From: Octopus sinensis
Lineage: Eukaryota
Direction: 5' to 3'
Length of the DNA stretch: 64,000 nucleotides
Assembly (NCBI RefSeq): GCF_006345805.1
Contig: NC_043015.1
Span: forward strand, 27,342,001-27,406,000
Below are positions 2,148 through 63,348 of this stretch, one piece after another. The first letter of the stretch is position 1, and each line of letters opens with the position of its first letter. The notes beneath the pieces were generated by a model, which was given only the letters and a program-made list of their open reading frames with translations, had not been told where the DNA came from and made no database searches. The translations under genes were made by a program, and so were the position numbers.

Positions 2148-2196
<49 letters not shown>

Positions 2197-2356
2197 GTAT
2201 ATATATATGTATGTATATATATTATGTATATATATATAATGTATATATATATATATAATATATATATATGTATATATATATATATATGTATATATATGTG
2301 TATATATATGTATATATATGTATATATATATGTATATATATGTATATATATGTATA

Positions 2357-2387
<31 letters not shown>

Positions 2388-2417
2388 GTATTATATTACA
2401 TTATATATATATATATA
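1773..2417. repeat. (TA)n/(TATG)n microsatellite tract
   Basis: Directly visible; source of the spurious YI-repeat ORFs. Confidence 0.97.
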
Positions 2418-5400: not shown

Positions 5401-5744
5401 TCCAAATTTGCCATCAAGATGTAGGACAAGATATTGTGATAGCCTGGGCTTCAGAGGCCCACGGCTCTTCAATATCCTCCCGAAGAACCTGAGGGACCTG
5501 CATGGTGTAGATGCGGATGTCTTTAAAGTAGGACTGGATCTCTTCCTGTCAGGTGTCCCGGATGAACCAACTTCACGGCAGGAGGTGCAGATGAGGGCAG
5601 CTGCATTGAACTCTCTCATGCATCAGATGGCGTTTGCTAAAAAGCATCCGTGAGGTAAAACCGTGTAGCAAACCAAATGGCGCTGCCCCAGCATGGCCAC
5701 AGCTCATTAGCTGAAACTGGAAAAATCAAATGAAAACAATCAAT
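2418..5744 (+). mobile_element. CR1/L2-group LINE, near-complete ORF2 (APE endonuclease + RT), frameshifted, copy 2
   Basis: APE motifs (LLNIRGL, IALTETHL, GGVAMY, YRPP, MGDFNLP, LDLCLTN, SDHN) at about 2700-3370. RT motifs at 4314-5653. Same 3' end as copy 1. Confidence 0.93.
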
Positions 5745-5860
5745 ATCATATATATATATATAATATATATGTATATATATATATATATATAATTATATAT
5801 ATATATGTATATATATTATATATATATATTATATGTATATATATGTATATATATATAATG

Positions 5861-5912
<52 letters not shown>
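5745..5912. repeat. (TA)n microsatellite
   Basis: Directly visible. Confidence 0.97.
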
Positions 5913-8826: not shown

Positions 8827-8926
8827 NNNNNNNNNNNNNNNNNNNNNNNNNNNNNNNNNNNNNNNNNNNNNNNNNNNNNNNNNNNNNNNNNNNNNNNNNN
8901 NNNNNNNNNNNNNNNNNNNNNNNNNN
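8827..8926. other. Assembly gap (100 N)
   Basis: Run of exactly 100 N. Confidence 0.99.
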
Positions 8927-9152
8927 GGACAAGTGTCTTCCAGAGGACCATCATGGTTTCTTGTTCTCTTGTTCTGAAGGTTCTAAGAACCAAGCCAGCC
9001 GTCTACATTTCATTGTCAGTTTAGCAACATGTACATGAAAGGTCGCGTCATCACTCATGTGAGTACCAGGTCACGCACTGATTGTGCCTCTGGGATGCAA
9101 TCCCTCCGGGTCCAGTGTATTTCATTGGGTATTGCATTCAGTTTTGCATGCT
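8927..9152 (-). mobile_element. CR1/L2-group LINE internal fragment, inverted
   Basis: Reverse complement matches about 911-1140 of copy 1. Confidence 0.85.
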
Positions 9153-9835
9153 GACTGGATGGATTCTTAGAGCTTTTAGAACAAGAGACCAGGAAACCAT
9201 GATGGTCCTCTGGAGGACACTTGTCCTAAGCCACTTTGACTATTGCTCTCAGTTATGGTCACCAACCAGTGTCAGATTAATCACAGAACTTGAGGCGATC
9301 CAACGAAGCTACACAAAGAAGATAGCCTCTATGCAGTATATAATCTATTGGCAAAGACTCGAGAGATTAAGACTCTATTCCTTAGAGTGTAGGCGAAAAA
9401 GATATGCCATAATATACATCTGGAAGATCCTCGATGGACTTGTCCCAAACTGTGGCATCGAGAGTTACACAAATACCAGAACTGAGCGCCACTGCATAGT
9501 GCCAAGGACTCCAAATTTGCCACCAAGATGTAGGACAAGATACCGAGATAGCTCGGGCTTCAGAGGTTCACAGCTCTTCAATATATCCTCCCGAAGGACC
9601 TGAGACCTGCATGGTGTAGATGTGGATGCCTTTAAAGTAGGACTGGATCTCTTCCTGTCAGGTGTCCCAGATGAACCAACTTCACGGCAGGAGGTGCAGA
9701 TGAGGGCAGCTGCATCAAACTCTCTCATACACCAAATGTCAATTGCTAAAAAGCATTCGTGAAGTAAAATCATGTAGCGACACCGAATGGCATGGCCACA
9801 GCTCGTGAGCTGAAACTAGATAGAATAAAAAAATT
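9153..9835 (+). mobile_element. CR1/L2-group LINE 3' end, copy 3 (5'-truncated)
   Basis: ORF 9082-9603 (HFDYCSQLWSP, LYSLECRRKRY) and the conserved 3' end CATGGCCACAGCTC...GCTGAAACTAGA. Confidence 0.9.
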
Positions 9836-9839
9836 AAAA

Positions 9840-10950
9840 ATCTATATATATATGCACATATATATATATATACATATATAATATATATATGTATATATAT
9901 ATACAATATATATATATGTATATATATGCATAATATATATATATATGCATATATATATATATCATCATCATCATCATCGTCGTATATATACGTCTATCTC
10001 CAATGCATATATATATATATATATGCATATATATATTATATATATGCAGATATATATATATATATATGCATATATATATATATATGCATATATATATATA
10101 TATATATATATATGCATATATATATAATGCATATATGCATATATATATATATGCATATGATATATATATATGCATATGCATATATATATATATGCATATG
10201 CATATATATATATATGCATATATATATATATGCATAATATATATATATAGCATATATATATATATATATTGCATAGGCATATATATTATATATATGCATA
10301 TATATGCATATATATGCTATATATATATGCATAGTGCATATATATATGATATATATATATATGCATATGCATGATATATATATATATGCATATATATATA
10401 GGCATATGCATTATATATCTATATATGCATATATATATATATATGCATATTATATATATATATGCATATATATATATATATGGCATATATATATATGCAT
10501 ATATATATATTATGCATATATATATATATGCATATATATATATAGTATTATATTATATATGCATATATATATTATATATGCATATGCATATATATATATA
10601 TATGCATTAGGCATATTATATATGATATAATATATATATGCATATGCCATAATATATATGCATATATATATATATGCATAGCATATGCATATATATATAT
10701 GCATATATATATATATATATATATATAGATGCATATAATATATATATGATGCATATATATAGATATATGCAATATATATATATATAAATGCGTGTATATA
10801 TATATATATATGGTGTATATATATATATATGCGTGATATACTATTATATATATGCATATATATATTATGTATATATATATATATATATGAAATATCTATA
10901 GGTATATATATACATATATATATATATATATTGTGTGTGCTTATATATAT
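9840..10950. repeat. Long (TA)n microsatellite with TATGCA variant units
   Basis: Directly visible. Confidence 0.97.
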
Positions 10951-11019
10951 ACACAACGTCCTTTATATCTTTATATACTTATTTTTTACATCTTTACTTT
11001 TTTTATTATATTACTTTAC

Positions 11020-11410
11020 TCTTTTCTCTTTTACTCGTTTCAGTCATTTGACTGCGGCCATGCTGGAAGCACCGCCTAAATCGAAACTCGACCCCGGGAC
11101 TTATTCTTTTGTAAGCCCAGTACTTATTCTATCGGTCTCTTTTGCCGAACCGCTAAGAAACGGGGACATAAACACACCAGCATCGGTTGTCAAGCAATGC
11201 TAGGGAGACAATCACAGACACACGCATATATATATGTATACATATATACGACGGGCTTCTTTCAGTTTCCGTCTACCAAATCCACTCACAAGGCTTTGGT
11301 CGGCCCGAGGCTATAGCAAAAGACACCTGCCCAAGGTGCCACGCAGTGGGACTGAACCCGGAACTATGTGGTTGGTAAACAAGCTACTTACCACACAGCC
11401 ACTCCTGCGC
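11020..11410 (-). mobile_element. tRNA-derived SINE (family A)
   Basis: Minus strand has a GTGGCTGTGTGGTAAG...GGTTCAGTCCCAC head (A/B-box-like) and a 3' tail resembling the CR1/L2 LINE end. Further copies at 14820, 22060, 28565, 30180 and 49165. Confidence 0.8.
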
Positions 11411-11624
11411 CTATTGTATATTTATTATTATCCTTCATAATTATGTTTAAATTTATATATATATTTTTTTCTTTTTTGCGATCCCAACTTCATTAAAGTT
11501 TCACCGCCTTCCCCTCCTTTCCTCTTTCTCTCAACATCCAATTCCTTCCCATATATGAAGTAATCTACCCAGTATTCATTCTTTATCGAGTGAAGAAAAG
11601 GTATGGATGATTTGTTTTGGAGTC

Positions 11625-11890
11625 TCTGGACTGGCTTCTGTGCCGGTGGCATGTAAAAAGCACCAACTGATCGTGCCCGCTGCAAGTCCCCCTGGCACCT
11701 GTGACGGCGGCACAAAAAAAGCACCCACTATGCTCATAGAGTGGTTGGCGTTAGGAAGGGCATCTACCTGTAGAAACACTGCCAGATCAGACTGGAGCCT
11801 GGTGCAGCCTCCTGGCTTCCCAGACCCCTGTGAAACTGACCAACCCGTGCTAGCACGGAAAACGGACGTTAAATGATGATGATGATGATT
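11625..11890 (+). mobile_element. RTE LINE 3' UTR fragment with (GAT)n tail
   Basis: Matches 25600-25798. Confidence 0.85.
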
Positions 11891-13401
11891 CTCCCTCTTT
11901 GTTTCTCTCTCACTTTCCCCACTCTCTTACTCTTCCTTTCTCTCGGACTCTCCCTCGCTTTCTCTTCTCTATCTTTATTATCTCTCTCCCCATTATAAAC
12001 AACAAAAGATTGAGTAAGTTGAGAAATAAAATATTTAGAAAGATCAATCATAAATATCAGGCAGTAACAATGGAAAGGTCTGCTTCAAGGCAGACAGCAA
12101 AACACTAACATTTAAAAGGGACAGACGAACTTGCGAGCTGAATTAAAATAATAAAATATTGGAAACCAAAGTTTGAAGGGATAGAATCTGAGGATAGTAG
12201 AGTCACCATGGCTGGCATTTCTTAACGACGGACAGCAATGTTTTAACAGTTTAACGGCTGGTGTAAAATTTTGCACTTGATGTAAAAGAAAATCCCTAAA
12301 CACCAAGTTCTGAAGTGATTCTTTCTCATGACAGTAGACTCACCATGGCAAGCATTCAAAACTTCTTCATCATGGACGGCAACACATTGACGATTAAAAG
12401 GCTGGCGCAAATTTTTTTAGCTTGATGTAACAGAGAATTCCTAAACACCCGCTCCTTTAACATTTTGGTTAATATAACCCGATTTCATTTGGGTCTACTG
12501 GGGCCACATTTTATAAGATGAGGAATTTTGTCCTAGAGGTCACGCCATTCATTTGAGGGAAAAAAATAGTTGTCATGCAAACTTGCGAGCATAGGTCTGC
12601 ATATTTTCAGCTCAACCGACCACATAATGCACACATTATATATATGTATATATGTGTGTGTGTGTTGGAGTCTCTCTCATACGTGAGCGTTGACGCTGAA
12701 TTCAACTGGTAAGCAGGTAACCTTGTCTTTGTTGAAATAGTTGTGAGCTGCTGGAGTTATTTCTCTGACGGGTAATAGGAATTTCCATATCCTCCGAGAA
12801 AATTAACTGTTGACCCAGACAATTAGAATTAATTTTAATAAAAGCATTAATTTAAGAAAAAATAATAAAGTAGTAAAAAATGAAAATTTAGCACGAAAAA
12901 TTTGCAGGGTTCTAAATAAATGTTAAAATGTAATAGATACGAAAAACCTACGTTATCACCAGAACACGAACGCTGGTTGGTGTGTTCTGTTTGTATTTGC
13001 TCCATCGGCGCGTTGACAGGCAGACAATAGTATGCGATGGCAGTGACAATGATAATTCTCTCTATGAATGCAGAGAGATACATAAAAGAAGGCCGTTTGA
13101 AGAGGTGAAAGTAATGGGAATGTATGAAATAGAGTGAGTGAAAAAGTGCTGGGAAGAGAGGAAATAGCGAGAGTGAGTTGAGGAAGACAGATACATTAAA
13201 GAACAGGAGTGGACTTGTCAAAGTGGGTTTTTGGCCCTAGCAACGACACCTTTTAAGATAGGGATTTCTAAGGTAGCCCACGGGCATCGTCACCTCATTT
13301 TACATGTCCCTGTAAATTTTGGAGTGAATCCAACGGGATGTAGTGGCCTTGAAAGTGATCCAAGCGGTAAAAATGCATTTCAGTTTTATATATAGAGAAG
13401 A
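11891..13401 (-). mobile_element. Non-autonomous Helitron, 3'-truncated (same family as 46182-48228)
   Basis: 5' end A|TC at 13401 on the minus strand. Extensive reverse-complement similarity to 46182-46620 and 47400-48160. Confidence 0.8.
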
Positions 13402-13405
13402 TATG

Positions 13406-13436
<31 letters not shown>

Positions 13437-14471
13437 AAAATAGGATTAAATCTTTATAAGAATTTATCAAGTAGTTAGCATGAAAAATATATACATTTCT
13501 ATGTAAGAAATGAACCATGGCTCATACACACACCAGCTTCACACTTATTTACTCATCCATATGCACACTCACACATATACACATACATACATACACACAA
13601 ACACAAATACATAAAACACATATCACTCCACACAGCACCTACACTAGGTTACTTGCACACATGCACACACACACAGGTCCATTTTTTTGCACACACACAC
13701 ACACACACACACATAAATAATATATATGGTGGGAGAGTATGTTTGTGTCTTCTTGTCTTCACATCACATAGTGGTAAAAAGAGGGTCTCTGTGTCATACG
13801 AGCAGTGTCATTCATTTCACATTTCCAGTATCCTGCGAGAACATGTCTTTTCATGGGAAAATATCACCTTGCTTAGTGACAGGAAGGGCATCCAGCCATA
13901 GAAAACCAGGCCTCAGTCAGCACTGGTGTTGTTTCTATGGTTGCATGCCCTTCCTAAAGCCAACCACTTTACTGTGTGTATTGAGTGCTTTATTTTTTTC
14001 ATGACAACAGCAATATGAGGCCATCAAGTAACTTGCAAGACCAGAAAAGAAACAGAAAGAAAAATTCCCCTTGACTGAATGGAGTGGAGGGATAGGAAGA
14101 GAGAGAGAGGAGGAGTGGTTTTATGACAGGTGTTGAAGGCAAAAGTATTGTAGAAGAACAAGCACAGGTATCTTCTTCAATGGAGATACATAGCTTCCCT
14201 GCATGATATGAAGGAGGGTGAGAGTAGCTGGAAAGGAAAAAGTGGTTGTAACAGCATACTGGAGCATATTTTCAAAGTACAATGTAACAATCAGAAGGAA
14301 ATGAAACACCAGTAGCATGGAATTTTTGTAAGGAAAACAAGTGAACTTACAGAACTGATATCATGAAAAATTAATTTAATTTGATTTATTTCAATTTAAT
14401 TTTTGCTGTATTTCTGTATGATAAATTGTCTTTACAAATGACTGAAAATTAAATTAAAAAAAAAAAAAAAA

Positions 14472-14755
14472 CTGGCACTTCATTACTTACAATGATCAGG
14501 GTCACAGTTGATCCAATCAATGGAATAACCTGCTTGTGAAATTAACGTGCAAGTGGTTGAGCACTCCACAGACATGTCTACCATTAACGTAGTTCTCAGG
14601 GAGATTCAGCATGACACAGAATGTGACAAAACTGGTCCCTTTGAATTACTGGTACAATGTAAAAAGTTTCTTGCTCAAGGACACAGTGCACCAGTGGGTA
14701 TTGAACTCATGACATTACAATTGTAAGCCAAATACCCAAACCACTTGGCCATGGC
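14472..14755 (-). mobile_element. Degenerate tRNA-head SINE (family B)
   Basis: Minus strand has a TGGCCAAGTGGTT...GAGTTCAATACC head followed by a TGTCCTTGAGCAAG core-like segment. Confidence 0.6.
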
Positions 14756-15714
14756 AGATATAGACACTCACATAAAAGTTTCTGCACACCCATATATATA
14801 TATATATATATACACACACACGAGAACATGTTTGCATCTACCAAATCCACTCACAAGGCTTTAGTTAGGCCAAGGCAAGAGAAGAAGAGACTGACCCAAG
14901 GTGCCACACAGTGGGACTGAACCTGGAACAATGCGGTTGGGAAGCAAACTTCATACCACACAGCCATATATATATATATACTTATTCAGAAATATATATG
15001 CATGAATATGACAATATACATTATACAACCACTTATGCATATAATGCATATGCTATAAAATTAGGACACAGCATGTGTGTGTGTGTATTTGTGTGTATAA
15101 ACATATGTACACAGCATCTATACTATACATACACGTATGTTTTATATAGAAATAAAAATTTCAGGAAATTCATAATGGCATGTTGGTCATGGTAGGGAAG
15201 ATGGTGAATGGGTGGCAATCATAAATATTAACTTTATTGTTCATTGTATTTGTAGCTAATGGCAAAGAAGTGGTGAAGTGGTGAGAAGACAAAGAGCCTT
15301 CTACATTTTTTTTACAACAATCTTCTAACACCTTTTTGTTGTTGTTAGTGTTGTTATTGTTGTGGAATATGTTATTATTTTGGTCACATTGTTGTTGCTG
15401 CTAAGTTTTGTTTTGTTTTTTGTTTCTTTGCCATGAGATGAGTTACCAACTCATTAGCAACAACTTGCTGCTGTTGCTAATATGAATATTTTACTCATTA
15501 TAATTGTTTGAGTTGCTACTCTTCTTCTTGTTGGTGGTGGTAGTGGTGTTATTACAGTTCATCACCATAAGAGGGAGTTGCTAGTATTGCTATTAATTTC
15601 TTTCACAAGAATAATATCACGTTCTATGATATAGAGATGTATACTATAAGTATAGATATATGTATATGTATATATGTGTGTGTGTGTATGTGTGTGTGTG
15701 TGCAAGTGTATTCA

Positions 15715-24914: not shown

Positions 24915-25625
24915 GCCCCCGTGCAGGTGACACGTAAAAGCACCATCCGTTCGTAGCCGTTTGCCAGCCCTGTCTGGCCCCCGTGTCGGTGGCACGTAAA
25001 AGCACCAGCCGTTTGTGTTCGTTGCCAGCCTGGCCTGGCGCCCGTGCCGGTGACACGTAAAAGCACCATCCGTTCGTGGCCGTTTGCCAGCCCTGTCTGG
25101 CCCCCGTGCCGGTGACACGTAAAAGCACCATCCGTTCGTGGCCGTTTGCCAGCCCTGTCTGGCCCCCATGTCGGTGACATGTAAAAGCACCATAAGCACC
25201 ATCCGTTCGTGCCGTTTGCCAGCCCTGTCTGGCCCCCATGTCGGTGACATGTAAAAGCACCATCCGTTCGTGTCCGTTGCCAGCCTCGCCTGGCCCCCGT
25301 GCTGGTGACACGTAAAAGCACCATCCGTTCGTGGCCGTTTGCCAGCCCTGTCTGGCCCCCGTGTCGGTGGCATGTAAAAGCACCATCCGTTTGTGTCCGT
25401 TGCCAGCCTCGCCTGGCCCCCGTGCCGGTGACACGAAAAAGCACCATCCGTTTCGTGGCCGTTTGCCAGCTCTTTCTGGCCCCCGTGTTGGTGGCACGTA
25501 AAAGCACCATCCGTTCGTGTCCGTTGCCAGCCTCGCCTGGCCCCGTGCCAGTGACACGTAAAAGCACCATCCGTTCGTGGCCGTTTGCCAGCTCTGTCTG
25601 GCACCTGTGCGGGTGGCACGTAAAA
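24915..25625 (+). repeat. About 61-bp GC-rich minisatellite (about 12 units) within the RTE 3' UTR
   Basis: AAAAGCACC recurs every about 61 bp, with two alternating unit variants. Confidence 0.92.
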
Positions 25626-49419: not shown

Positions 49420-52400
49420 TCTCACTACAGGACAATGGATGATGGTAACAGATATTTACCACATGCTACCTTATCAAGTGAAGTACATTGTCATCCACTT
49501 CACCTATAACCTTCATAGCGTACAGACAATTCAAACGACCCCACACCACTATACCACCACTGATACCTTCATCCTTCTAACTGTCTACTTTCTTATAAAT
49601 ACAACAGAATTCATTTCCAGCCATTCAACAGCTTGCAGTGCACCTGGAAAATGGTCAAAGAGTGTACTTCACCGATGCTAATGCTTCTCTATTGGCAGAG
49701 GAGCCAAGGGATAGCACACTCACTGCATTCTTCAAGTTTTGTCAAGTGGATCCATTTGTCAAGTGGATCATTTTCCTCTGTAGTTAATTCTGTAGATGAC
49801 CTCAAAAACAAAGTCTTTCCCAACTTCACACAAAACTACCAAAATCACAATTGGCTGTGTGAAAGAGCAATATTAGCTCCAAAAAACGTAGCTGTTAACA
49901 GCTAATGCATTCTCTTCCCAGCACTATACACACTTACAAGTCTGTTGATACAATTCCAGATATAAATGAAGTTGTGAACTATCCTCCTGAATTTCTCAAT
50001 TCATTGGAGCCTCCTCAACTACCTCCACACATATTAGCACTTAAAGTTGGGATTCCTGTAATGCTACTCCACAATCTGGAACCACCAACACTTTGCAATG
50101 GAACACGACTGGTAATAAAGATACCTTGCTGTATCCACAGATTACATTGTACTACACTTGGAATGGAAAAAAAATGGGCCCCACAGAAAGCAGGTCAAAA
50201 TGTTCGTGGATACCCTGGCATTAAGTTTCACACTTGCCTTGGGCGAGTATACACAGTGCATCCCACTCAACAAGAGTGCTTCTACCTTCGTCTACTACTG
50301 CATGAGGTCAGAGGGCCAACGTCTTTCCAGGCCCTAAAAATCGTTCATGGACATGTCTGCACAACATACAGAGAAGCCTGCTATCGACAAGGTCTGTTAG
50401 AAGATGGTGCACAATGGGATGCAACTTTAGGAGAGGCTGCTTTATCACAATCACCTAAAAGTCTCAGGGCACTATTTGCAGTATTACTACAGGCATGTGA
50501 ACTGTGTGATCCAGCCACTCTATGGCTCAAATATAGAGACAACCTGGCTGAAGACTTTCAGCGCGAAGCTTAACTGCTCTATCTTGACATGGAGGGTATC
50601 AGCAATGAAATCTATAACAAAACACTCATTGACATTGAAGGCAGAATTGCTAAACTGGGTGGAAATGAATTGTCGACGTATGGCCTGCCACAAGCATCCA
50701 GGTCAGGGTCAAATAGCCTTCCCACTGCTGTCATTCATGAAACAACCTACGACACTCAAGCGCTTTCAAAGTACATTGTTGAAAATAAACCTAACTTACT
50801 TCCGGACCAGCTGCAGGCCTACAGAACTATTCTTAACAGTGTACGCCAATGCGAGGGACAAATCTTCTTCCTCGATGCTCCTGGAGGGACATTTATTACA
50901 AAGCTTCTCCTTGCAGAAGTTAGGCAGCATCAGGACATTGCAGCAGCTGTAGCTGCAGCTACTTTGTTACCCAGTGGCAGGACAGCACACTCAACTTTTA
51001 AACTCCCTCTCAATTTAGCAGCATCCGAAATGCCTTCATGCAACATCAACAAAAGCTCTGATCAGGGACAAGTACTTAAAATGTGTCAGCTAATTGTCTG
51101 GGATGAGTGCACTATGGCTCACAAGGGAGCTTTGGAAGCATTAGAGCCCTGAAAGACATCCGAGACTGTCAGGCTCCAATGAGAGGTGTAACGCTTCTGT
51201 TGTCAAGTGATTTCAGGCAAACTCTTCCTGTCACTCCGAAAGGCACTAGAGCAGAGGAAGTCCAAGCATGCCTAAAGTCCTCTACCCTGTGGCATCATGT
51301 TACAATCCTCAGTCTCACCACTAACATGAGAGCTCAGCTACATGGCGACAAAATGTCCACAAAGTTTGCACAGGACATTTTGACACTTGGTGAAGGCAAG
51401 ATGCCTCTTGATGCTGCAGGACAAATGGAAGTGTGGTCATTTTCCTCTGTAGTTAATTCTGTAGATGACCTCAAAAACAAAGTCTTTCCCAACTTCACAC
51501 AAAACTACCAAAATCACAATTGGCTGTGTGAAAGAGCAATATTAGCTCCAAAAAACGTAGCTGTTAACAGCTAATGCATTCTCTTCCCAGCACTATACAC
51601 ACTTACAAGTCTGTTGATACAATTCCAGATATAAATGAAGTTGTGAACTATCCTCCTAAATTTCTCAATTCACTGGACCCTCCTCAACTACCTCCATACA
51701 TATTAGCACTTAAAGTTGGGATTCCTGTAATGCTACTCCACAATCTGGAACCACCAACACTTTGCAATGGAACACGACTGGTAATAAAGAAAATGAGGTC
51801 ACACGTTATCGAGGTGATCATTCTTTCTGGATGTGGAAAGGGTGATGATGTTTTTATTCCAAGATTTCCTCTTACTCCATCTGGAGCAGAAATTCCATTT
51901 ACATTCAGAAGACTGCAATTCCCCCTTCGTGTCAGCTTCGGATTGATCACTGACAGAGATGGTGAATCTAGGATAACACCACCAAATGAAATAAAAAATT
52001 AAATTAAAGACAAGACTATTGTCTATAAAGTATACAATGTAGAGAAAGAAAAAAAGATTTGAACACCTGGAGGAAAGCACCATCGAAAAGTGTCTTGGTG
52101 CAACTATGAAAGATATCTAACCAGAGGCAATAAATTGGCCACAATAGAAGCAACGTTCGAGTCAACGGAGCGTGCAAGGGAGTACTTGACTCGAGCCTTG
52201 CAAAGTGGAAATATTTTATCTTTACCTTTATATCTGGGACGTAGGACGTCCCGGATAAAAATTAAAAAGTCCCCCCAGAAGTAGAGGTAGGCTGGATTGT
52301 AGCCACACTTCTATACAAGAGGGAGGACAAGATACAATTAATCGAAATTGCAAGAGACGGGCCTACAATTCCAGTCTGTTATATATTTTGAGTATTGTTA

Positions 52401-52799: not shown

Positions 52800-55700
52800 T
52801 CATCATCATCATCGTTTAGCATCTGCTTTCCATGCTGGCATGGGTTGGACGGTGCAACTGGGGTCTGGGAAGCCAGAAGGCTGCACCAGGCCCAGTCTGA
52901 TCTGTCAATGTTTCTACGGCTGGATGCCCTTCCTAACGCCAACCACTCTGTGAGTGTAGTGGGTGAATTTTACGTGCCATCGGCACAGGTGCCAGATGAG
53001 AATGGCCTACGGATGGTGCTTTTTACATGCCACCGGCACGGAGGCCAGGCAAGGCTGGCAACGGCCACGATCGGATGGTGCTTTTTACATCCCACCAGCA
53101 TGGAGGCCAGTCGGGATGGGGCTGGCAACGTTCGGATGGTTCTCTTACATGGCACCAGCGCTGGTATCACAGCTACAATTTCCATTGATGTTGATCGATT
53201 TCGATTCTCACTTGCCTCAACAGGTCTTCACATGTAGAGTTTTGTGTCCCAAGAAGGAAAGGTATGCATAAGTGGACTGGCTACATCCCAGGTAAAGGCC
53301 ACGGGTAATGGTCTCACTTGTCCTGCCAGGTCTTCTCACGCACAGCATACTTCCAAAGGTCTCGGTCTCTAGTCATTTCCTCGGTGAAACCTAAAGTCCG
53401 AAGGTCGTGCTTCACCACGAGAGGCCTTTTGTCACCAGCAGAGGAAGGAGTTCTCTGAACTTTGCCCAGGCTATTCTTACTCTAGCAGTTACACTTTCAG
53501 CACACCCACCCCCACTACTGACTTGGTCACCTAGGTAACCTTGAATGTGGCAGAAGTTGGTCTCTGTGCATTTTCAGTGTTTATTGCTCCTGAGCATCTG
53601 CCACATACAAAAACTATTTTCCTAGTTAGCCTTCCTTTGACATTGCTGCACCTCTTAGCTTACACTTGGTGCGAGTTTCTACCTACGCCTTTTCTACAGA
53701 TCGAGCAGGGCCATCTAACTGAAGGCATTTGTGATTTGTCTACCTTCCTACTTATTAGGACTTTGGTTTTAGCTAGGTTGATTCTAAGGCCCCAACCTCT
53801 ACCTTGAATTTTTCAGTGTACTCGTTGCCAACCCTCACCTTACTTACAGCGTCCCTGTACATGGCTCGCACAGCTCTCAGTAACCATTCATCTATCCCTA
53901 CTTTCCTCATTGACCACCAGATAAGGGATCTGAGACCCTGTCGAAGGCTTTCTCCATGTCAACGAAAGCCAGGTACAAGGGCTTATCTTTAGCTAGGTAT
54001 TTCTCCTGCAGCTGTCTTACCAGGAATATAGCATCAGTGGTACTTTTCCCTGGCACGAAACCAAACTGCATCTCATCTAAACTAACTCTCTCTCTAATTA
54101 GTTGAGCTATGACCCTCTCCGTAACCTTCATTACCTGATCCAACAGCTTGATATCCCTGTAATTATTTGTATCTAGGGTGTCACCCTTACCTTTGTAGCA
54201 GTTGACTATTAAGCTGCTACACCAATCATTGGGAATGACTCCTTCATGTATCACCTGGTTAACTATACGGATTACTAGGCTATAGCCGACACTACCAGAT
54301 ATTTTGAGCATCTCTGCAGTAATTCCTGATGGGCCTGGGGCTTTCCCTGTCTTCATGCGTCTAATTGCCTTAACTACCAAGGAACTGTCAACTCGGATAG
54401 CTGGACCCTCTGTTGGGTCAACATTCGGCAGACTCTTTATTCCATTCATTTTCTTTATTCAGCAACCTTTCATAGTGGCGTCTCCAAACCTCTCTCTTTG
54501 CATCCTCATTTAGCGCAAGTAAACCATCATCCATGCAAACACATTTCTCTCCTACCACATCACGATTCTCTCTCACACACTGTCTTGCAACACAAAATAC
54601 CTCAAGTCTTCCATCCTCACGGCACAGAACATTGGCAAATTTTTTCTTATCTGCTTCTCCTCTGGCTAAATACACCTGCCTCCTAGCTTCCCTTCTGGCA
54701 GTCTGATACACTTCCCTGCTACCACCGTTCTTCCAGTCCTTCCAAGCCTGTTTCTTTTGTCTAATAGCCCTGTCAACAATATTGTTCCACCACCATGCTA
54801 TTTTGGGTCTTGAGGGAACTTTGCACCAACCACAGATCTGGTCAGTGGCTCTCAGCAGGTTGTCCCTTAGAAACCTCCAGTTGTCTTCTACCCCATGTGA
54901 AGCTATATCCCCTTCTATTTCGTCAAAGGCTTCAAGTAATATGTCTCTAAATCTCTGTCCATTCGCAGGATCTTTAAGCTTCCAGACCCTTCTTCTCTAT
55001 GTTGGTCATCTTCTGGTCTTCCTCTTAGTCCTGATCCTAAAGTCACTAACTACCAGTCTATGTTGCGGGGTAAATTCTTCGCCTGGGAAGGTTTTGGCAT
55101 TTATAAGCAGCCATCTTTCCCTTTTTCTGGCAAGGATGTAGTCAATTTGGCTAGTATGTCGGCCCGATCGGTAGGTGACTAGGTGGCTGGTAGGTTTCCT
55201 GAAGTTAGCGTTGCAAACCATAAGATCATTCGCATCGCAGAACTCCAGCAACCTGGTTCCCTCCTCATTGCGGGAACCATAACTGTAGCCTCCATGTACG
55301 CCCCCAGCATGTTGTCCAACATGCCCATTGAAGTCACCAGCCACAAAGAGAAGGTCCCTGTCGTTCATCAACACGTTAGTCTGCAGTAGGGTGTCATAGA
55401 ATCGGTCTTTCTGTCCATAGGGTAGCCTTGGCTGAGGGGCATAGGCTGATATAATGGTCGCTAATGAAGCACTAATCTAATCTTAAGTATTCTGTCACAT
55501 ACTCTGACTACCTCAATTACCTTATCTACCCATTTCTCAGCAAGAAGTATACCCACACCCCCGACCCCGTCAGTGTTCCCAGCCCAGAAAATCTTGTACC
55601 TGTGTTCTTTGCCTGTGAGGAACCTAGCAGAACCTCCTCTCCACCTCACTTCTTGAATGCAGCACATATCAACACATCTCCATTCAAGCAAATCAACAAT

Positions 55701-56230
55701 CTCGCCAGACCTACCTTTCAGTGTGCCAACGTTGAGGATGTGGGAGGTATAGGCTCTAGACACCTTGGGACAGGGGACAGTAGCTTCATGTACCTGAAAA
55801 GAAAACTCGCATTTGGCAGGATTCATAGACAAACAATAGACTTAAGTTCAAACCGCGTACACTACACTATCATATTTTGCAATGTATGATCACTACCTTA
55901 TATAGCAGGGGTGGGGGTGGCGTAAGACTTTTGAAGTGTACATGGGAGATAACCAAGGATGACAAAATTGAGACTTCCTGTAAAGGTGCAGTGGGTGGGA
56001 GGGCGGGTGTACCGTGAAAAGAGATAGGAAGACAGACAGTGTGAAGAGATAGAGATAGAGAAAAACATAGTGAGACAGAGAGGGGGGGTCGTGACCCGCG
56101 AAAACTAGCAGCCATGAAGGGGCGCCTCTCATCTCTTGGAAAAGGAATATTTCGTTGTAGGTATTAAGAGACATGATTGAGAGAGAGATATGTTGCAGAT
56201 TTAGGGGAGATGCGTGAGCTAAATTTATCT
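52800..56230 (-). mobile_element. RTE LINE, near full-length (5' UTR, APE, RT, 3' UTR) with internal deletions
   Basis: APE ORFs 55461-55832 (LNVGTL, CIQEVRW) and 55006-55374 (GDFNGHVG, SQIDYIL). RT ORF 53907-54449. 3' tail at 52800. The 5' boundary is approximate. Confidence 0.9.
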
Positions 56231-56814: not shown

Positions 56815-58740
56815 TAGCTATCTCTATCTCTTCACACTGTCTGTCTCCCTATTGGGCATGTCAGATGGCAATCCAGTATTTTCCATGGTGTTCACGGGGG
56901 CCCTGGAATTAGTTCCAAAAACAAAGAGGGAACTAGGCTACTAGTTCTCTGGTGCCTGCAACCTATTAATCTGCAACACTAAGTTCAGGAAGCCAGACAG
57001 CCACCTGATAACCTATCAATCAGGCAACTTTGCTAGCCAGATTGATTTCATCCTCACCAGACAGCAGGATGCAGGGTTGCTCTTAAATACAAAGACCCTC
57101 CCTGGTGAAGAATGTACCCCCCAGCATAGACTAGTTATTAGTGATTTTAGACTCGAGGCCAGAAGGATGCCAAGAAGCAGAACAATCCAGAAAAGAAGGA
57201 TTTGGAAGCTTAAGAACCCTTCACATGGTCAGAGATTTAAGGACATCCTCACTGAGAAATTTGATGAGAGGTAGGAGGAGCTACAGATTTTGGACATAGA
57301 GGGTAACTGGAAATTCCTATGGGACAGCTTACTGAGTGCCACAGACCAAATATGTGGCTGGTGCAAAGTCCCTTCCAGACCTTGAGTAAGGTGGTCATGG
57401 AATACGGTAGTCAAGGCCATTAGAGGAAAAAAACAGGAAGAGTGGGGGTAGCAGGGAACTGTACCGGATAACCACAAGGGAGGCTGGGCAACAGGTATAC
57501 ATAGCAAAGAGAGAAGGAGAAACGAAGAAGTATGCCAATGTTCAGCGACGTGAGGACCAACAAACTGAAGTATTTCAGATTGCAAGACAGTGTGTGAGAG
57601 AAAAATGTGATGTCACAGGAGAGAAATGTGTCTGCATGGATGACGGTACACTTGCTTTTAATGATTCTGAAAAGAAAGAGGCTTAGAGAAGCTATTATGA
57701 AAGGCTGCTAAATGTGGAGAATGAATGGGAGGAGGAAAGCCTGCCAAATGTTGACCCAGCAGAGGGACCAGCACCCTGGTAGATAAAGCAATTAAGGATA
57801 TGAAGTCAGGAAAAGTCCCCGGCCCATCAGGAATCACTGCTGAGATGTTTAAAATATCTGGTGATGTCGGTCATGGCCTAGTTAACCATATTGTAAACCA
57901 GGTAGCTCATGAAGGAATCATACCCAATGACTGGCACAGCAGCACCATAGTCAAGTGCTACAAAGGTAAAGGTGATGCTTTAGATAGAAATAACTACAGG
58001 GGATTCAAAGATCAGGTGATGAAGGTCACGGAGAGGGTCATAGCCCAACTAATTAGGGAGAGAGCCTGCTTGGATGAGATGTAGTTTGGTTTTGTGCCAG
58101 GGAGAAGCACCACTGATGCTATATTCCTGGTACAGCAACTGCTGGAGAAATACCTAGCCAAAGATAAGCCCATATACTTGGCTTTTGTTGACTTGCAGAA
58201 AGCCTTTGACAGGGTCCTCCGATCCCCTATCTGGCGAGTGATGTGGAAACTGAGGATTGAAGAGTGGTTAATAAGAGCTGTACAGGCCTTATACAGTGAT
58301 GCCGTTAGTAAGGTAAGGGTCGGCAATAAGTATAGTGAAGAATTCCAGGTAGAAGTAGGGGTTCACCAAGTTTCAGCCTTCAGTCCCCTATTATTCATCA
58401 TAGTCCTCCAGGCAATAACAGAGGAATTCAAGACGGGCTGCCCCTGGGGGCTCCTCTATGCTGATGACCTTGCTCTCATAGCAGAATCACTACCAAAACT
58501 AGAGAAGAAATTTCAGGTGTGGAAGCAAGGTTTAGAATCAATGTTGCAAAAACCAAAGTTCAAGTAAGTAGGAAGGCGAACACATCACAAACCCCTTCAG
58601 GTAGATGGTCCTGCTTGATCTGTAGAAAAGGTGTAGGTAGAAACACCATAAGATGTACCCAGTGTAAGCTATGGATGCATATGAGGTGCAGCAACATTAA
58701 AGTAAGGTTAACCAGGAATATAGCTTTTGTATGCGGCAGC
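56815..58740 (+). mobile_element. Degenerate RTE LINE
   Basis: ORFs 57077-57274, 57800-58084, 58094-58567 (LLYADD) and 58519-58791 (PHD remnant). Confidence 0.88.
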
Positions 58741-59658: not shown

Positions 59659-59748
59659 TTATCACTCCTGTGTGTGTGTGTGTATGCATACATTCGCATA
59701 CACATATATACCCGAACACATTTACACACACACGTGAGTATGTATGTG

Positions 59749-59781
<33 letters not shown>

Positions 59782-59856
59782 GTGTGTGCGTGTGTGTAAA
59801 TGTGTTCGGGTATATATGTGTATGCGAGTGTATGCACACACACACAGGAGTGATAA
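59659..59856. repeat. About 200-bp palindrome centred on a (TA)n run
   Basis: TTATCACTCCTGTG...TACCCGAACACATTTAC pairs with GTAAATGTGTTCGGGTA...CACAGGAGTGATAA. Confidence 0.88.
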
Positions 59857-60096
59857 CATGCCATCTGGTTTGACAGCGAGCGAGTCTGTACTTGATGCTC
59901 GAAATAGCAGCCAAATCTCCCCCTCATTCAACTGACTTGAAAAGAAAGGGGTAAATTAATGTAGTCCTAGCTACAAAATGACCAAAAGGAAAACGATGAG
60001 GGTGGTCAGTCAGAGTCGGAACACCTTTACATGTAGGACTGTTCTGTCAGGATAGTCCTCCAGTTAAACAACAACCACGACAACAGCAAATTTTCG

Positions 60097-62980
60097 GTAC
60101 TTGTCTATTGTCGTGGTCCCGGTTTCTCACACGCGAGTTCGCGCGCGCGCGCGCACCAGACATAGGTACTCGATACTCGAGATCCTACGAGGTGACTTGC
60201 GCATGCGCAGTGCGATTCGCGCATGCGCGTTAAACCCCCCCCCTAAAAAAAAGGTGTTGGATTTCACTAAAAATATATGTGTTGTGTGTGTGTGTGGTGT
60301 GTTATATAACATTTTCAATTTACACAAAAAAATACATAGTCGCTTTCCTCGCGGATTAAGATAAATGAATTAATTACTATTTTACAGAATAAAATTAATG
60401 AATTAATTATATAAATTAATAATTCTTGAAAATTAATTTATTAATAATATTTTTTGAACAAAGTAAATAATTTAATAAAACTTGGTTAATAATTTTTTTT
60501 ACACAAACGCGAACGTATATAATTTGTGAAACTTTTTTTTTTTTTACAGACGTATATAATTTGGTAAACTTAATGAATTAATTTCTTCTCATCATCATCA
60601 TCGTTTAACGTCCGTTCTCCATGCCAGCATGGTTGGACGGTTCGACCGGGGATCTGGGAAGCCAGAAGGCTGCACCAGACTCCAGTCTTATCTGGCAATG
60701 TTTCTACAGCTGATGCCCTTCCTAACGCCAACCACTCCGAGAGTGTAGTGGGGGCTTTTTACATGCCACCCGCACAGGTGCCAGGAGAGGCTGGCAACGG
60801 CCACGGTCGGATTGGTGCCAGTCGAGGCGGCTCTGGCATCGGCCACGATTCGGATAGTGCTTTTACGTACCACAGTCCAGGGGTCCTGGCATTTGCGGGT
60901 GCCACCACTTGCCCCAACATGTCTTCGCAAGCAAAGGGGGTTGGCGTGGGTGCCTGTCATGGGAGGAGGTTCGATATCAACTTCGCTTGCCTCAACAGGT
61001 CTTTGTGTATAAATGTATAAATTTTTCGCACTAAATTCTGTCCGTAGAATTTATCAAAAAACGCACAAAATTATTCCGTAGAATTTTCAAATTAAAAAAC
61101 GCAAAATTAATATATTTTTGAAATTGCAAATTATTTAGAATATAAAAAAAATGAAGTTAAATTTTAAAATAAATGTCATATACTTATACTCTGTAAGGTG
61201 CTGTGTTCACACTTCAATTTACTTTTCTAGAAATGTTGCTTTTCTAATTGAAACAATTTTTCTCAATCTCCATTTAAAAGTCCATAATGCCTCTTGAGCC
61301 ATATCAAAATGAACAACTTTGAATTACGCGGCGGCGGTGGTGGTGTGAGGTTCTAATTTTTTTTCTGATCTCTCTTTGCCCCCTCTTTATCTCAGTTGTT
61401 CATTCCGCTAGATTAGAAAAAAATTTTCGCGCCCAATTTTTATTGTCGCGGGAAAAGATGAACGATTAAAATAAATATATCTTAATTGTAGTGTGACGAT
61501 AAAGTATATATTTCTGATGACAAAATAATATTATCTTTTTCAAAAACATCCCAAATTTACACACTAGATATATCGTGTAGGTTTAAGAAATATATATATA
61601 TATCTTATCATATATATATATATAAATATAAGAGAATGAAAATCTTTCATCTGTCTCCCCACCACACCTCCATTAGGGGGCAAAGAGAGATCAGAAAAAA
61701 AATTAGAACCTCACACCACCACCACCACCGCCGCCGCGTAATTCAAAGTTGTTCATTTGATATGTCTCAAGAGGCATTATGGACTTTTAAATGGAGATTG
61801 AGAAAAATTGTTTCAATTAGAAAAGCAACATTTCTAGAAAATAGTAAATTGAAGTGTGAACACAGCACCTTACAGAGTATAAGTATATGACATTTATTTT
61901 TAAATTTAACTTCATTTGTTTTATATTCTAAATAATTTGCAATTTCAAAAAATATATTAATTTTGCGTTTTTTAATTTGATAAATTCTACGGAATAATTT
62001 TGGCGTTTTTGATAAATTCTACGGAAAGAATTTAGTGCGAAAAATTTATACATTTATACACAAAGACCTGTTGAGGCAAGCGAAGTTGATATCGAACCTC
62101 ATCCACGACAGGCACCCACGCCAACCCCCTTTGCTTGCGCGAAGACATGTTGGGGCAAGTGTGGCACCCGGCAAATGCCAGGACCCTGGACTGGTGGTAC
62201 GTAAAAAGCACTATCCGAATCGTGGCCGATGCCAGAGCCGCCTCGACTGGCACCAATCCGACCGTGGCCGTTGCCAGCCTCTCCTGGCACCTGTGCGGGT
62301 GGCATGTAAAAAGCACCCACTACACTCTCGGAGTGGTTGGCGTTAGGAAGGGCATCCAGCTGTAGAAACATTGCCAGATAAGACTGGAGTCTGGTGCAGC
62401 CTTCTGGCTTCCCAGATCCCCGGTCGAACCGTCCAACCCATGCTGGCATGGAGAACGGACGTTAAACGAGATGATGATGAGAGAAGAAATTAATTCATTA
62501 AGTTTACCAAATTATATACGTCTGTAAAAAAAAAAAAGTTTCACAAATTATATACGTTCGCGTTTGTGTAAAAAAAATTATTAACCAAGTTTTATAAATT
62601 ATTTACTTTGTTCAAAAAATATTATTAATATTAATTAATTTTCAAGAATTATTTAATTATTATAATTAATTCATTAATTTTATTCTGTAAAATAGTAATT
62701 AATTCATTTATCTGTAAATCCGCGAGGAAAGCGACTATGTAATTTTTTTGTGTAAAATTGAAAATGTTATATATACACACACACACCACACACACACACA
62801 AATATTTTAGTGAAATCCAACACCTTTTTTTAGGGGGGGGGGTTAACGCGCATGCGCGAATTCTGCACTGCGCATGCGCAAGTCACCTCGTAGGATCTCG
62901 AGTATCGAGTACCTACGTCTGGTGCGCGCGCGCGCGAATTCGCGTGTGAGAAACCGGGACCACGACAATAGACAAGTACC
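60097..62980. repeat. Large inverted duplication: about 1.3-kb arms (60097-61384 / 61676-62980), about 290-bp spacer
   Basis: Colinear reverse-complement match throughout. Each arm contains the same RTE 3' UTR fragment (about 60590-61010 minus and about 62055-62480 plus). Differences are mostly single-base indels. Confidence 0.93.
62847..62880. promoter_or_regulatory. Tandem NRF-1-type palindromic motifs in a CpG-rich patch (mirrored at 60198-60229)
   Basis: CGCGCATGCGCG (62847-62858) and TGCGCATGCGCA (62869-62880) match YGCGCAYGCGCR. Function is inferred. Confidence 0.5.
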
Positions 62981-63045
62981 AAATTTTCTTTTATCAAAAG
63001 TAATGGAAATAAAAAACAAAAACGAGTAGTAATCCTTGAACTCAC

Positions 63046-63348
63046 CAAGGGAGTATAACCAGACGTATCCGTGGCATTGGCCGTACAACCATATCGCTGT
63101 TTCTCTAGTTTACGCCGAACCCCTTCAATGTCCCCAGTCACAGCATCATTCCATAAACCTCTTTCGAAATCTAATTCTGGTAAAGTTTGATGTAACGAAG
63201 GTTGTAACGACTGACTCTGGCAACACACATGGTTTTCGGCACTTGATAACCTTTGAAAGTTACTGTTATTACTATTAACAGTGGTGGAACTAGTTTTACT
63301 GTTGTTTGTGTTGTTTTGTAAACAATTGCAGGAGTGGAAGTTGTTCAT
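63046..63348 (-). CDS. ANKRD39: First coding exon (101 codons) of ankyrin repeat domain-containing protein 39-like
   Basis: SLHQTLPELDFERGLWNDAVTGDIEGVRRKL...DTSGYTPL resembles the ANKRD39 N-terminus ([21 protein letters not shown]...DSAGYTAL, from memory). Phase-0 donor TTG|GTGAGT at 63046/63045. Confidence 0.85.

What the first reader, a model, noticed from the sequence alone, without database searches (positions are those of the whole stretch)
60097..62980. 2.9-kb palindrome ending about 65 bp from the ANKRD39 exon-1 splice donor
Seen: about 1.3-kb inverted arms with an about 290-bp spacer. Both arms contain the same RTE fragment, so the duplication post-dates that insertion and this is not a simple TIR transposon. 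Arm differences are mostly single-base indels, which looks like unpolished long-read consensus of near-identical sequence. Inference: either a recent template-switch inverted duplication or a foldback assembly artefact. If real, the pre-mRNA would form a >1-kb dsRNA right behind the 5' splice site. That would be a strong ADAR substrate, relevant because coleoids have extensive A-to-I editing, and could affect splicing.
Basis: partly seen in the sequence, partly recalled or inferred. Interest (0 to 1): 0.7.

Follow-up and report, generated by a model that had tools for sequence, protein, structure and literature searches.

The report
Hairpin-shaped Merlin transposon in octopus intron
The 2.9-kb palindrome is a real but ordinary kind of object: a defective "jumping gene" of the Merlin family, folded into two mirror-image 1.3-kb arms, that inserted into the first intron of the Octopus sinensis ANKRD39 gene after this lineage split from O. 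bimaculoides.

Summary
Window 60096-62980 has two ~1.29-kb inverted arms around a 290-bp spacer and ends 65 nt from the ANKRD39 exon-1 splice donor. The unit is flanked by a perfect 8-bp direct repeat, and the orthologous O. bimaculoides site holds that 8-mer once with both flanks contiguous, so the whole unit is a transposon insertion. Its origin can be named. It has an 8-bp target-site duplication and 5'-GG termini. It shares a terminal motif (GGTACT-N11-GTGGTCCCGGT), in register, with an O. sinensis element encoding a DDE_Tnp_IS1595 (Merlin) transposase. Each arm is collinear with that element's 3' side and keeps a 34-aa transposase remnant. It is therefore a non-autonomous, foldback-shaped Merlin derivative in which one half was replaced by an inverted copy of the other, after a LINE fragment had landed in it. 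Formation of long intronic dsRNA that ADAR could edit is a sound inference but was not tested. Interest is modest.

The parts
60088..60095 (.). Left copy of the 8-bp target-site duplication (AAATTTTC on +; GAAAATTT in gene orientation)
   Evidence: It abuts the arm end exactly and is identical to 62981-62988. O. bimaculoides has this 8-mer once (GAAAAGTT) with both flanks contiguous.
60096..61384 (.). Left arm (1289 bp), an inverted copy of the right arm
   Evidence: Gapped alignment: about 99% identity at aligned bases plus 35 small gaps.
60096..60123 (+). Merlin-type terminal inverted-repeat core, GGTACTTGTCTATTGTCGTGGTCCCGGT (starts 5'-GG)
   Evidence: It occurs only at the two element ends in the window; 0 matches expected by chance. 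It shares GGTACT-N11-GTGGTCCCGGT in register with the 5' TIR of the L004 Merlin element.
60589..61003 (-). 5'-truncated LINE 3' fragment with (CAT)n tail, nested in the arm
   Evidence: About 10 other copies in the window. It is collinear with the 3' end of the EN+RT LINE at 52800-55832.
61036..61190 (-). Region homologous to the 3' subterminal part of the L004 Merlin element
   Evidence: blastn against L004 11560-11391: 69% over 177 bp, E = 5e-13. Short-word hits are 94-96% identical.
61203..61302 (-). Remnant of the Merlin transposase N-terminal region (left-arm copy, frame broken by an arm indel)
   Evidence: tblastn with P0124 aa 57-83: 48% identity, E = 6e-5. DNA match to L004 10269-10209: 88.5% over 61 bp, E = 2e-17.
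61385..61674 (.). Spacer / middle domain (290 bp, AT-rich, contains an (AT)n run, non-palindromic, non-coding)
   Evidence: It lies between the inner arm boundaries. It has no significant match to L004 or other loci apart from the microsatellite.
61675..62980 (.). Right arm (1306 bp), collinear with the 3' side of a Merlin element read towards its terminus
61762..61863 (+). Remnant of the Merlin transposase N-terminal region (right-arm copy)
   Evidence: tblastn with P0124 aa 57-90: 59% identity over 34 aa. E = 1e-8 against the element and 2.6e-7 against the whole window.
61876..62030 (+). Mirror of the Merlin subterminal homology
   Evidence: Coordinate mirror map of the match.
62063..62480 (+). 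Mirror copy of the LINE 3' fragment
62953..62980 (-). Merlin-type terminal inverted-repeat core (right end)
62981..62988 (.). Right copy of the 8-bp target-site duplication
63046..63348 (-). ANKRD39 exon 1 coding sequence (context, not part of the element); donor GT at 63045-63044, 65 nt from the element

Best explanation
Window 60096-62980 is a non-autonomous DNA transposon of the Merlin superfamily (IS1595/IS1016-like DDE transposases) that has taken on a foldback shape.

Shown. The 2885-bp unit is an insertion that created an 8-bp target-site duplication in intron 1 of ANKRD39, 65 nt downstream of the exon-1 donor. It inserted in the O. sinensis lineage after the split from O. bimaculoides, which retains the empty site. 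Each arm, read from the centre outward, contains a 34-aa remnant of a Merlin transposase, then a subterminal region homologous to a transposase-bearing Merlin copy elsewhere in the O. sinensis genome, then a nested LINE 3' fragment, then about 490 bp of terminal sequence ending in a Merlin-type 5'-GG terminus.

Inferred. The ancestor was an internally deleted Merlin element that had received a LINE fragment in its 3' half. That half was then copied in inverted orientation over the 5' half. This most likely happened by strand or template switching between the short original inverted termini during repair or replication. It lengthened the terminal inverted repeats from tens of bp to about 1.29 kb. 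Whether this happened before the element jumped here, or in place afterwards, cannot be decided from one copy.

The arms are probably nearly identical in reality. Most of their 35 small indels look like long-read consensus errors that short-read polishing could not fix in a self-similar region.

The element encodes nothing and has no evident selected function. Its expected effect is passive. When ANKRD39 is transcribed, the intron should fold into a duplex of about 1.26 kb close to the 5' splice site. That kind of young-repeat dsRNA is what ADAR enzymes mainly edit. At the DNA level, a long palindrome is a potential site of instability.
For: Insertion and TSD. A perfect 8-bp direct repeat sits flush with both ends. 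O. bimaculoides L002 reads GATAAAA-GAAAAGTT-GCTGTTG, with the flanks contiguous and about 92% identical to the O. sinensis flanks.

Merlin hallmarks. PMC8101967 gives an 8/9-bp TSD and a conserved terminal 5'-GG. Both are met. The same paper reports 191 Merlin sequences in O. bimaculoides, so the enzyme family is abundant in octopus.

Direct relation to a Merlin copy. The L004 element carries P0124 with DDE_Tnp_IS1595 (Pfam E = 3.8e-14). Its TIRs at 9415 and 11751 begin GGTACT...GTGGTCCCGGT, in the same register as this element. The motif occurs only at these termini across all loci; 0.02 matches are expected by chance per 20 kb even with 3 mismatches allowed.

Collinearity. Window 61036-61190 matches L004 11560-11391 (E = 5e-13). 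Window 61204-61262 matches L004 10269-10209, inside the transposase CDS (88.5%, E = 2e-17).

Protein remnant. P0124 aa 57-90 aligns at 59% identity, E = 1e-8, and is mirrored in the other arm.

Non-coding. No Pfam or Rfam family matches within the element.

Arms copied after the LINE insertion. The same LINE fragment lies at mirrored positions.

Error-like arm differences. 2.69 gap events per mismatch against 0.14-0.21 in the flanks, and 22 of 29 1-bp gaps are homopolymer-length changes.

Hairpin. MFE is -2274 kcal/mol against -704 for a shuffle, with 1261 inter-arm pairs.

Editing. A-to-I editing primarily targets dsRNA formed by young repeats across metazoans, O. bimaculoides included (PMC9989829).
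Against: Only one copy of this element was seen.

The related L004 copy is itself degenerate. Its TIRs are 74% alike, no TSD is visible and its transposase model is partial. It is only distantly similar at the termini (17 of 28 positions), so it is a relative and not the direct parent.

The 34-aa remnant lies outside the DDE domain and gets no Pfam call of its own.

Six of the 8 TSD bases (AAATTT) are self-complementary, so the TSD alone was ambiguous. The empty site resolves this.

The arm length (about 1.29 kb) is far above the 24-462 bp described for Merlin TIRs.

No read-level or second-assembly confirmation of the palindrome was possible. The O. vulgaris locus could not be fetched.

Transcription, dsRNA formation, editing and any splicing effect are untested.
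Confidence: 0.85

Rival explanations
1. Fold-back assembly artefact. Only one arm (or a conventional short-TIR element) exists in the animal, and the long-read assembler created the mirror arm from chimeric or palindromic reads.
For: The assembly is long-read based and the arms differ mainly by 1-bp indels typical of uncorrected long-read consensus. No independent assembly or reads could be examined.
Against: The unit has two proper termini, each flush with one copy of an 8-bp TSD, and O. bimaculoides has a clean empty site. The centre is a 290-bp non-palindromic spacer, not an abrupt turn-around. The sequence beyond the right arm is not the reverse complement of the left flank; it is the collinear continuation of the same gene, with exon 1 on one side and the rest of intron 1 on the other. 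The structure is 51 kb from the only N-gap in the window and inside a 53.9-Mb scaffold. Indel-rich differences are equally expected if the arms are real and near-identical, because short reads cannot be placed uniquely for polishing.
Confidence: 0.06
2. In-place arm duplication. A conventional, short-TIR Merlin deletion derivative inserted here and made the TSD. Only later did a template switch or repair event at this locus replace its 5' half with an inverted copy of its 3' half. On this view the foldback never transposed as such. This is a sub-variant of the best explanation and the part of the first reader's 'template-switch' idea that survives.
For: The arms are nearly identical (at most 1.0% substitutions) while the flanks differ by about 8% from O. 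bimaculoides, so the duplication is recent. No second foldback copy was seen. A switch between the original short inverted termini would place the new arm boundary exactly at the TSD, as observed.
Against: There is nothing direct. High arm identity is also expected for a foldback that transposed recently, or whose arms are kept alike by intra-element gene conversion, as in other foldback families. Only about 215 kb of a roughly 2.7-Gb genome (size from my own knowledge) could be searched for copies.
Confidence: 0.35
3. The element belongs to another cut-and-paste superfamily that makes 8-10-bp duplications (Mutator/Foldback, hAT or P/Galileo-like), and the similarity to the Merlin copy is secondary, for example a Merlin fragment captured inside it.
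For: 8-bp TSDs also occur in hAT and P, and 8-10 bp in Mutator/Foldback elements such as Tetris and Tm1. Most described foldback elements are assigned to Mutator. If the shared G is counted, a 9-bp duplication cannot be excluded.
Against: The similarity to the Merlin copy is not only internal. It includes the very termini, in register (GGTACT-N11-GTGGTCCCGGT), plus collinear subterminal and transposase-derived sequence. The terminus GGTAC fits Merlin's conserved 5'-GG. It does not fit the hAT (YARNG) or P (CANRG) terminal motifs; those two motifs are recalled from memory and were not checked here.
Confidence: 0.07
4. Local inverted duplication of host intron sequence by replication template switching, with no transposon involved.
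For: It is a palindrome with a spacer, a shape that template switching can produce.
Against: None of the 2885 bp is present at the orthologous O. bimaculoides site. The unit is bounded by a TSD. Its arms contain transposon termini and a transposase remnant.
Confidence: 0.02

Closest known systems
Merlin superfamily DNA transposons (eukaryotic relatives of bacterial IS1016/IS1595; DDE_Tnp_IS1595 transposase)
   Same: It has an 8-bp target-site duplication and termini starting 5'-GG. Its terminal motif, subterminal DNA and a transposase fragment are homologous to an O. sinensis element that encodes DDE_Tnp_IS1595. Merlin is reported as unusually abundant in octopus (PMC8101967).
   Different: It has no transposase gene, only a 34-aa remnant per arm, so it is non-autonomous. 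Its inverted repeats are about 1.29 kb, against the described 24-462 bp. The arms include a nested LINE fragment. Only one copy was seen.
Foldback-like elements (Drosophila FB, Tetris, nematode Tm1 of the Mutator superfamily; Galileo of the P superfamily)
   Same: Nearly the whole element consists of two long inverted arms around a short non-coding middle domain. It has an 8-10-bp TSD and no coding capacity. [quoted passage not shown]
   Different: Its ancestry is Merlin, not Mutator or P. The arms are not built from tandem sub-repeats; only 28-bp x2 and 34-bp x1.9 repeats were found. They are a straight inverted copy of one half of a deletion derivative.
Intronic inverted Alu pairs in primates as ADAR substrates
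   Same: It is an intramolecular long dsRNA formed by a young inverted repeat within a pre-mRNA intron. This class of substrate is the main target of A-to-I editing across metazoans (PMC9989829).
   Different: Here a single transposon supplies both arms, the duplex is about four times longer than an Alu pair and near-perfect, and no editing data were examined.

Membership tests
Merlin superfamily | 8-bp or 9-bp target-site duplication (PMC8101967) | tested here: met
   A perfect 8-bp direct repeat sits flush with both ends. It was verified as a duplication by the single-copy empty site in O. bimaculoides.
Merlin superfamily | Terminal inverted repeats whose ends are a conserved 5'-GG-3' (PMC8101967) | tested here: met
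   Both ends read GGTACTTGTC.... The repeat length of about 1.29 kb exceeds the described range of 24-462 bp. That range is descriptive, not defining.
Merlin superfamily | Encodes, or for non-autonomous members is derived from an element that encodes, a DDE_Tnp_IS1595 transposase | tested here: met
   The element has no intact gene. It shares its termini in register, collinear subterminal DNA (E = 5e-13 and 2e-17) and a 34-aa transposase remnant (59% identity, E = 1e-8) with the L004 element. The product of that element, P0124, matches DDE_Tnp_IS1595 at E = 3.8e-14.
Merlin superfamily | Mobilised by a Merlin transposase | not testable with these tools
   This needs an excision/integration assay, or population data linking mobility to an active Merlin copy.
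Foldback-like elements (structural class) | Very long inverted arms making up most of the element, a short middle domain, and no coding capacity | tested here: met
   Arms of 1289 and 1306 bp plus a 290-bp spacer make up 2885 bp. Only spurious ORFs are present, with no Pfam or Rfam hit.
Foldback-like elements (structural class) | Arms composed largely of tandem sub-repeats (FB, Tetris, Tm1, Galileo) | tested here: not met
   Tandem Repeats Finder finds only 28-bp x2.0 and 34-bp x1.9 units plus microsatellites in the arms.
Foldback-like elements (structural class) | A family of several copies with different target-site duplications | not testable with these tools
   No whole-genome octopus search is available. 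There is no second copy in about 215 kb of fetched octopus loci, and nothing in the metagenome or viral collections.
Mutator/Foldback superfamily | Relation to a Mutator-type (MuDR/Phantom) transposase | tested here: not met
   The only transposase-derived sequence in the element is Merlin-type.
hAT or P superfamily | Characteristic terminal motifs (hAT YARNG; P CANRG; recalled from the literature, not checked here) together with a 7/8-bp TSD | tested here: not met
   The TSD length would fit, but the terminus is GGTAC and the homology is to a Merlin element.
Palindromic long-read assembly artefact | An abrupt turn-around (no unique spacer), a far flank that is the reverse complement of the near flank, and often a position at a contig end | tested here: not met
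   There is a 290-bp unique spacer. The flanks are collinear, carry a TSD and match one continuous O. bimaculoides sequence. The structure is 51 kb from the nearest gap. Read-level depth was not testable.

The most novel reading that the evidence does not exclude
This could be the first recognised foldback-type family in the Merlin superfamily. On that reading it is recently or currently mobile in the O. sinensis/O. vulgaris lineage, its copies seed kilobase-long near-perfect intronic dsRNAs, and they act as strong ADAR sinks or splicing modifiers in a clade known for heavy RNA editing. For this copy specifically, the hairpin 65 nt from the ANKRD39 exon-1 donor, or its CpG-rich termini, might contribute to the exon-2-less 149-aa gene models.
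Probability: 0.12. Interest if true: 0.6.

Novelty: new variant of a known kind. Interest (0 to 1): 0.3.

Why it matters
The result turns a puzzling structure into an explained one. A 2.9-kb palindrome that looked like either an assembly error or an unusual rearrangement is a dated, lineage-specific transposon insertion with identifiable ancestry.

[quoted passage not shown] It also shows the steps in one molecule: internal deletion, LINE insertion, then inverted copying of one half.

In practical terms, it marks a locus where long-read consensus errors persist because the arms are self-similar. It also gives a defined natural substrate of about 1.26 kb of near-perfect intronic dsRNA next to a 5' splice site, in which editing and splicing effects could be measured in octopus. 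None of this is surprising to a transposon specialist, so the interest is modest.

Tried and rejected
1. The TSD taken alone was ambiguous. AAATTT is self-complementary, so 6 of the 8 bases could be read as an extension of the inverted repeat with a 2-bp gap. The O. bimaculoides empty site resolved this.

2. Argonauta hians (L003) was tried as an outgroup. Intron 1 is too diverged for a base-level call.

3. An independent assembly was sought. The O. vulgaris orthologue P0004 was found in the 90% cluster, but its gene range of 100,086 bp is over the tool's 100-kb limit, so no DNA was returned. No other gene model lies close enough to reach the site.

4. Other copies were sought. The unique arm parts and the 27-nt terminus were searched in the window, L001, L002, L004 and L005. 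A 21-mer was searched in the metagenome and viral collections. None was found.

5. Rfam was run at a permissive threshold over the element. Only two chance-level hits came back, far below gathering scores.

6. P0010 (O. sinensis Merlin) was not on record for DNA retrieval. The O. bimaculoides Merlin copy in L005 lacks the terminal motif and belongs to a different family.

7. Pfam on the transposase remnant alone found no family because it is too short.

8. hAT, P and Mutator assignments were considered from the TSD length and rejected on the termini and the homology. I also noticed a 9-mer (GTGGTCCCG) that I recall from the Drosophila P-element TIR. I treat it as coincidence, since the same motif is shared in register with the Merlin copy.

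9. Twin-priming, LINE-mediated or DIRS-like origins were rejected. The termini are symmetrical, there is no tail at either outer end, and the insertion has an 8-bp TSD with transposase-derived content.

10. The original O. sinensis genome paper was not found in the searchable library. The statement that the assembly is PacBio plus Hi-C based rests on my own knowledge.
Full report
**1.

The repeat finder lists a chain of inverted segments that together span 60093-62983. A gapped alignment of the left side against the reverse complement of the right side gives:
- a left arm at 60096-61384;
- a right arm at 61675-62980;
- a 290-bp spacer at 61385-61674.

The alignment has 1262-1274 matches, 13-16 mismatches and 35-36 gap events. 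The 27-nt terminus occurs only at the two ends of the unit, with 0 matches expected by chance.

Exon 1 of the neighbouring gene lies on the minus strand at 63046-63348. Its donor is CTTG|GTGAGT, and exactly 65 nt separate the exon from the element.

**2. Source and gene**

The exon-1 peptide is 100% identical to Octopus sinensis LOC118767104 (P0001, 149 aa) on chromosome CM016877.1 of assembly GCA_006345805.1. The O. bimaculoides orthologue (P0002, 218 aa) is named ANKRD39 and has ankyrin Pfam domains. An Argonauta hians orthologue also exists.

**3.

AAATTTTC abuts the left end (60088-60095) and the right end (62981-62988). Because AAATTT is self-complementary, this alone was ambiguous.

The orthologous O. 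bimaculoides locus (L002) settles it:
- window 63734-62980 aligns to L002 9624-10374;
- window 60095-60031 aligns to L002 10366-10424.

Base by base, in gene orientation:
- O. bimaculoides reads GATAAAA-GAAAAGTT-GCTGTTG;
- O. sinensis reads GATAAAA-GAAAATTT-[2885 bp]-GAAAATTT-GCTGTTG.

The whole palindromic unit is therefore an insertion that duplicated 8 bp of target. This is the signature of cut-and-paste transposition. The flanks differ by about 8% between the species, so the insertion occurred on the O. sinensis side of that split.

**4. Which transposon**

A review of the Merlin superfamily gives its hallmarks: TIRs with a conserved terminal 5'-GG, 8- or 9-bp TSDs, and a DDE_Tnp_IS1595 transposase. 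It also reports that O. bimaculoides is unusually rich in Merlin sequences, with 191 found (PMC8101967). This element has the 8-bp TSD and begins GGTAC.

To test the lead, I aligned five octopus Merlin proteins from that paper's supplement. I used the alignment to find octopus gene models and fetched their loci.

In L004, an O. sinensis gene (P0124) matches DDE_Tnp_IS1595 at E = 3.8e-14. It is bracketed by inverted repeats at 9415 and 11751 that begin GGTACTATTTAAGAAGAGTGGTCCCGGTGC and GGTGCTACTTGAGAACAATGGTCACGGTGC. The palindrome's terminus is GGTACTTGTCTATTGTCGTGGTCCCGGTTTC, so positions 1-6 and 18-28 are identical in register. The composite motif GGTACT-N11-GTGGTCCCGGT occurs only at these termini in all fetched loci. 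With three mismatches allowed it also picks up L004's other end, against 0.02 matches expected by chance.

The arm is also collinear with L004's 3' side:
- window 61036-61190 matches L004 11560-11391 (E = 5e-13);
- after an internal deletion, window 61204-61262 matches L004 10269-10209, inside the transposase coding sequence (88.5%, E = 2e-17).

At the protein level, P0124 residues 57-90 align to 61762-61863 (+) at 59% identity (E = 1e-8 against the element, 2.6e-7 against the whole window). They also align to the mirror position 61302-61222 (−).

A second octopus Merlin copy (L005, O. bimaculoides) lacks the motif and belongs to a different family.

I conclude that the element is a non-autonomous Merlin derivative related to the L004-type family.

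**5. How the palindrome arose**

Both arms carry the same LINE 3' fragment at mirrored positions (60589-61003 and 62063-62480). The fragment is collinear, including its (CAT)n tail, with the 3' end of a LINE at 52800-55832 that has endonuclease and reverse-transcriptase ORFs.

The right arm keeps the natural order and orientation of a Merlin 3' half: transposase fragment, then subterminal region, then terminus. The simplest history has four steps:
1. A Merlin element lost most of its transposase gene.
2. It received a LINE fragment in its 3' half.
3. That half was copied in inverted orientation over the 5' half.
4. This lengthened the inverted repeats to about 1.29 kb.

[quoted passage not shown] The copying mechanism is inferred. 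I favour strand or template switching between the short original inverted termini during repair or replication. Whether the copying preceded or followed the insertion at this site cannot be decided from one copy.

**6. Artefact or real?**

A fold-back artefact does not explain several features:
- two proper termini, each flush with a TSD copy;
- a clean empty site in a sister species;
- a 290-bp non-palindromic spacer;
- flanks that continue collinearly through one gene.

The structure is also 51 kb from the only gap in the window.

The arms differ by 35 gap events against 13 substitutions. Of the gaps, 29 are 1 bp and 22 of those are homopolymer-length changes. Clean orthologous flanks show only 0.14-0.21 gap events per mismatch. 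Such errors are expected to persist where short reads cannot be placed uniquely. That the assembly is PacBio-based is my own knowledge; the paper was not in the library.

Read-level confirmation was not possible.

**7. Consequences**

As assembled, the intronic transcript (minus strand) folds into a single hairpin. MFE is -2274 kcal/mol against -704 for a shuffle. There are 1261 inter-arm pairs, and the longest perfect stem is 111 bp. The real duplex is probably more perfect.

**8. Comparison and novelty**

The element meets the Merlin criteria that could be tested: TSD, 5'-GG termini, and derivation from a DDE_Tnp_IS1595 element. It also has the structural features of foldback-like elements: long arms, a short non-coding middle, and an 8-10-bp TSD as in Tetris and Tm1.

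It differs from both groups in these ways:
- its arms are about three times longer than the longest described Merlin TIR;
- its arms are not built from tandem sub-repeats;
- its ancestry is Merlin rather than Mutator or P.

No paper in the searchable library pairs Merlin with foldback or long TIRs. I rate it a new variant of a known kind, of modest interest.

**9. Side observations**

ANKRD39 exon 2 (70 aa, two ankyrin repeats; L002 29560-29769) has no counterpart anywhere in the 105-kb O. sinensis locus. The syntenic interval contains a 100-N gap, duplicated blocks and satellite arrays. The O. sinensis and O. vulgaris models are both 149 aa, joining exon 1 to exon 3. Other items are listed separately.

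Noticed in passing
L001 58489-93073 (includes window 1-14860); L002 29560-29769: ANKRD39 exon 2 (70 aa, two ankyrin repeats) is present in O. bimaculoides but has no tblastn or blastn counterpart anywhere in the 105-kb O. sinensis locus. The O. sinensis and O. vulgaris gene models are both 149 aa (exon 1 joined in frame to exon 3). The gene spans 85 kb in O. sinensis and 100 kb in O. vulgaris, against 23 kb in O. bimaculoides. This is either an assembly gap or misassembly, or a real loss of the exon.
   Followed up: partly
window 8827-8926 and window 1-5912: A 100-N scaffold gap is flanked by duplicated blocks (window 1-1953 against 3608-5912, about 91% identical). ~55-60-bp satellite arrays lie further on in L001 at 86-90 kb. 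This stretch of the assembly looks unreliable.
   Followed up: no
window 59659-59856: A second, smaller inverted repeat (arms 59675-59731 and 59790-59846, 96% complementary, rich in TG/TA microsatellite) lies about 240 bp from the element. It aligns to O. bimaculoides L002 10419-10675 in both orientations, so it predates the species split and is unrelated to the Merlin insertion.
   Followed up: partly
window 60199, 60219, 62848, 62870: Each arm terminus is CpG-rich (first 150 bp: 60% GC, 21 CpG) and holds two GCGCATGCGC palindromes. These are the only four in the 64-kb window. The motif resembles an NRF1 binding site (my own knowledge). They could be transposase-binding or promoter-like sites now sitting 130-150 bp into intron 1.
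   Followed up: no
window 52800-55832 (-), 58094-58567 (+): A LINE has Exo_endo_phos_2 and RVT_1 ORFs, and its 3' end is the same sequence as the fragment nested in the arms. A separate reverse-transcriptase fragment lies 1.5 kb from the element. The clade (RTE or other) was not determined.
   Followed up: partly
window 49905-52002 (+): There are PIF1-like helicase ORFs (Pfam E = 1e-23), with a duplicated N-terminal segment (the same ~70 aa at 49905 and 51574). This suggests a rearranged Helitron-like element.
   Followed up: no
window 25020-25445: A tandem array of ~62-bp units is derived from an internal segment of the LINE 3' region (it matches window 60757-60818). This is a small satellite seeded by the retroelement.
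   Followed up: no
L004 9415-11751: An O. sinensis Merlin copy has a partial DDE_Tnp_IS1595 gene (P0124) and 74%-identical TIRs. It has no recognisable target-site duplication, so it is an old, degenerate relative of the element's ancestor.
   Followed up: partly
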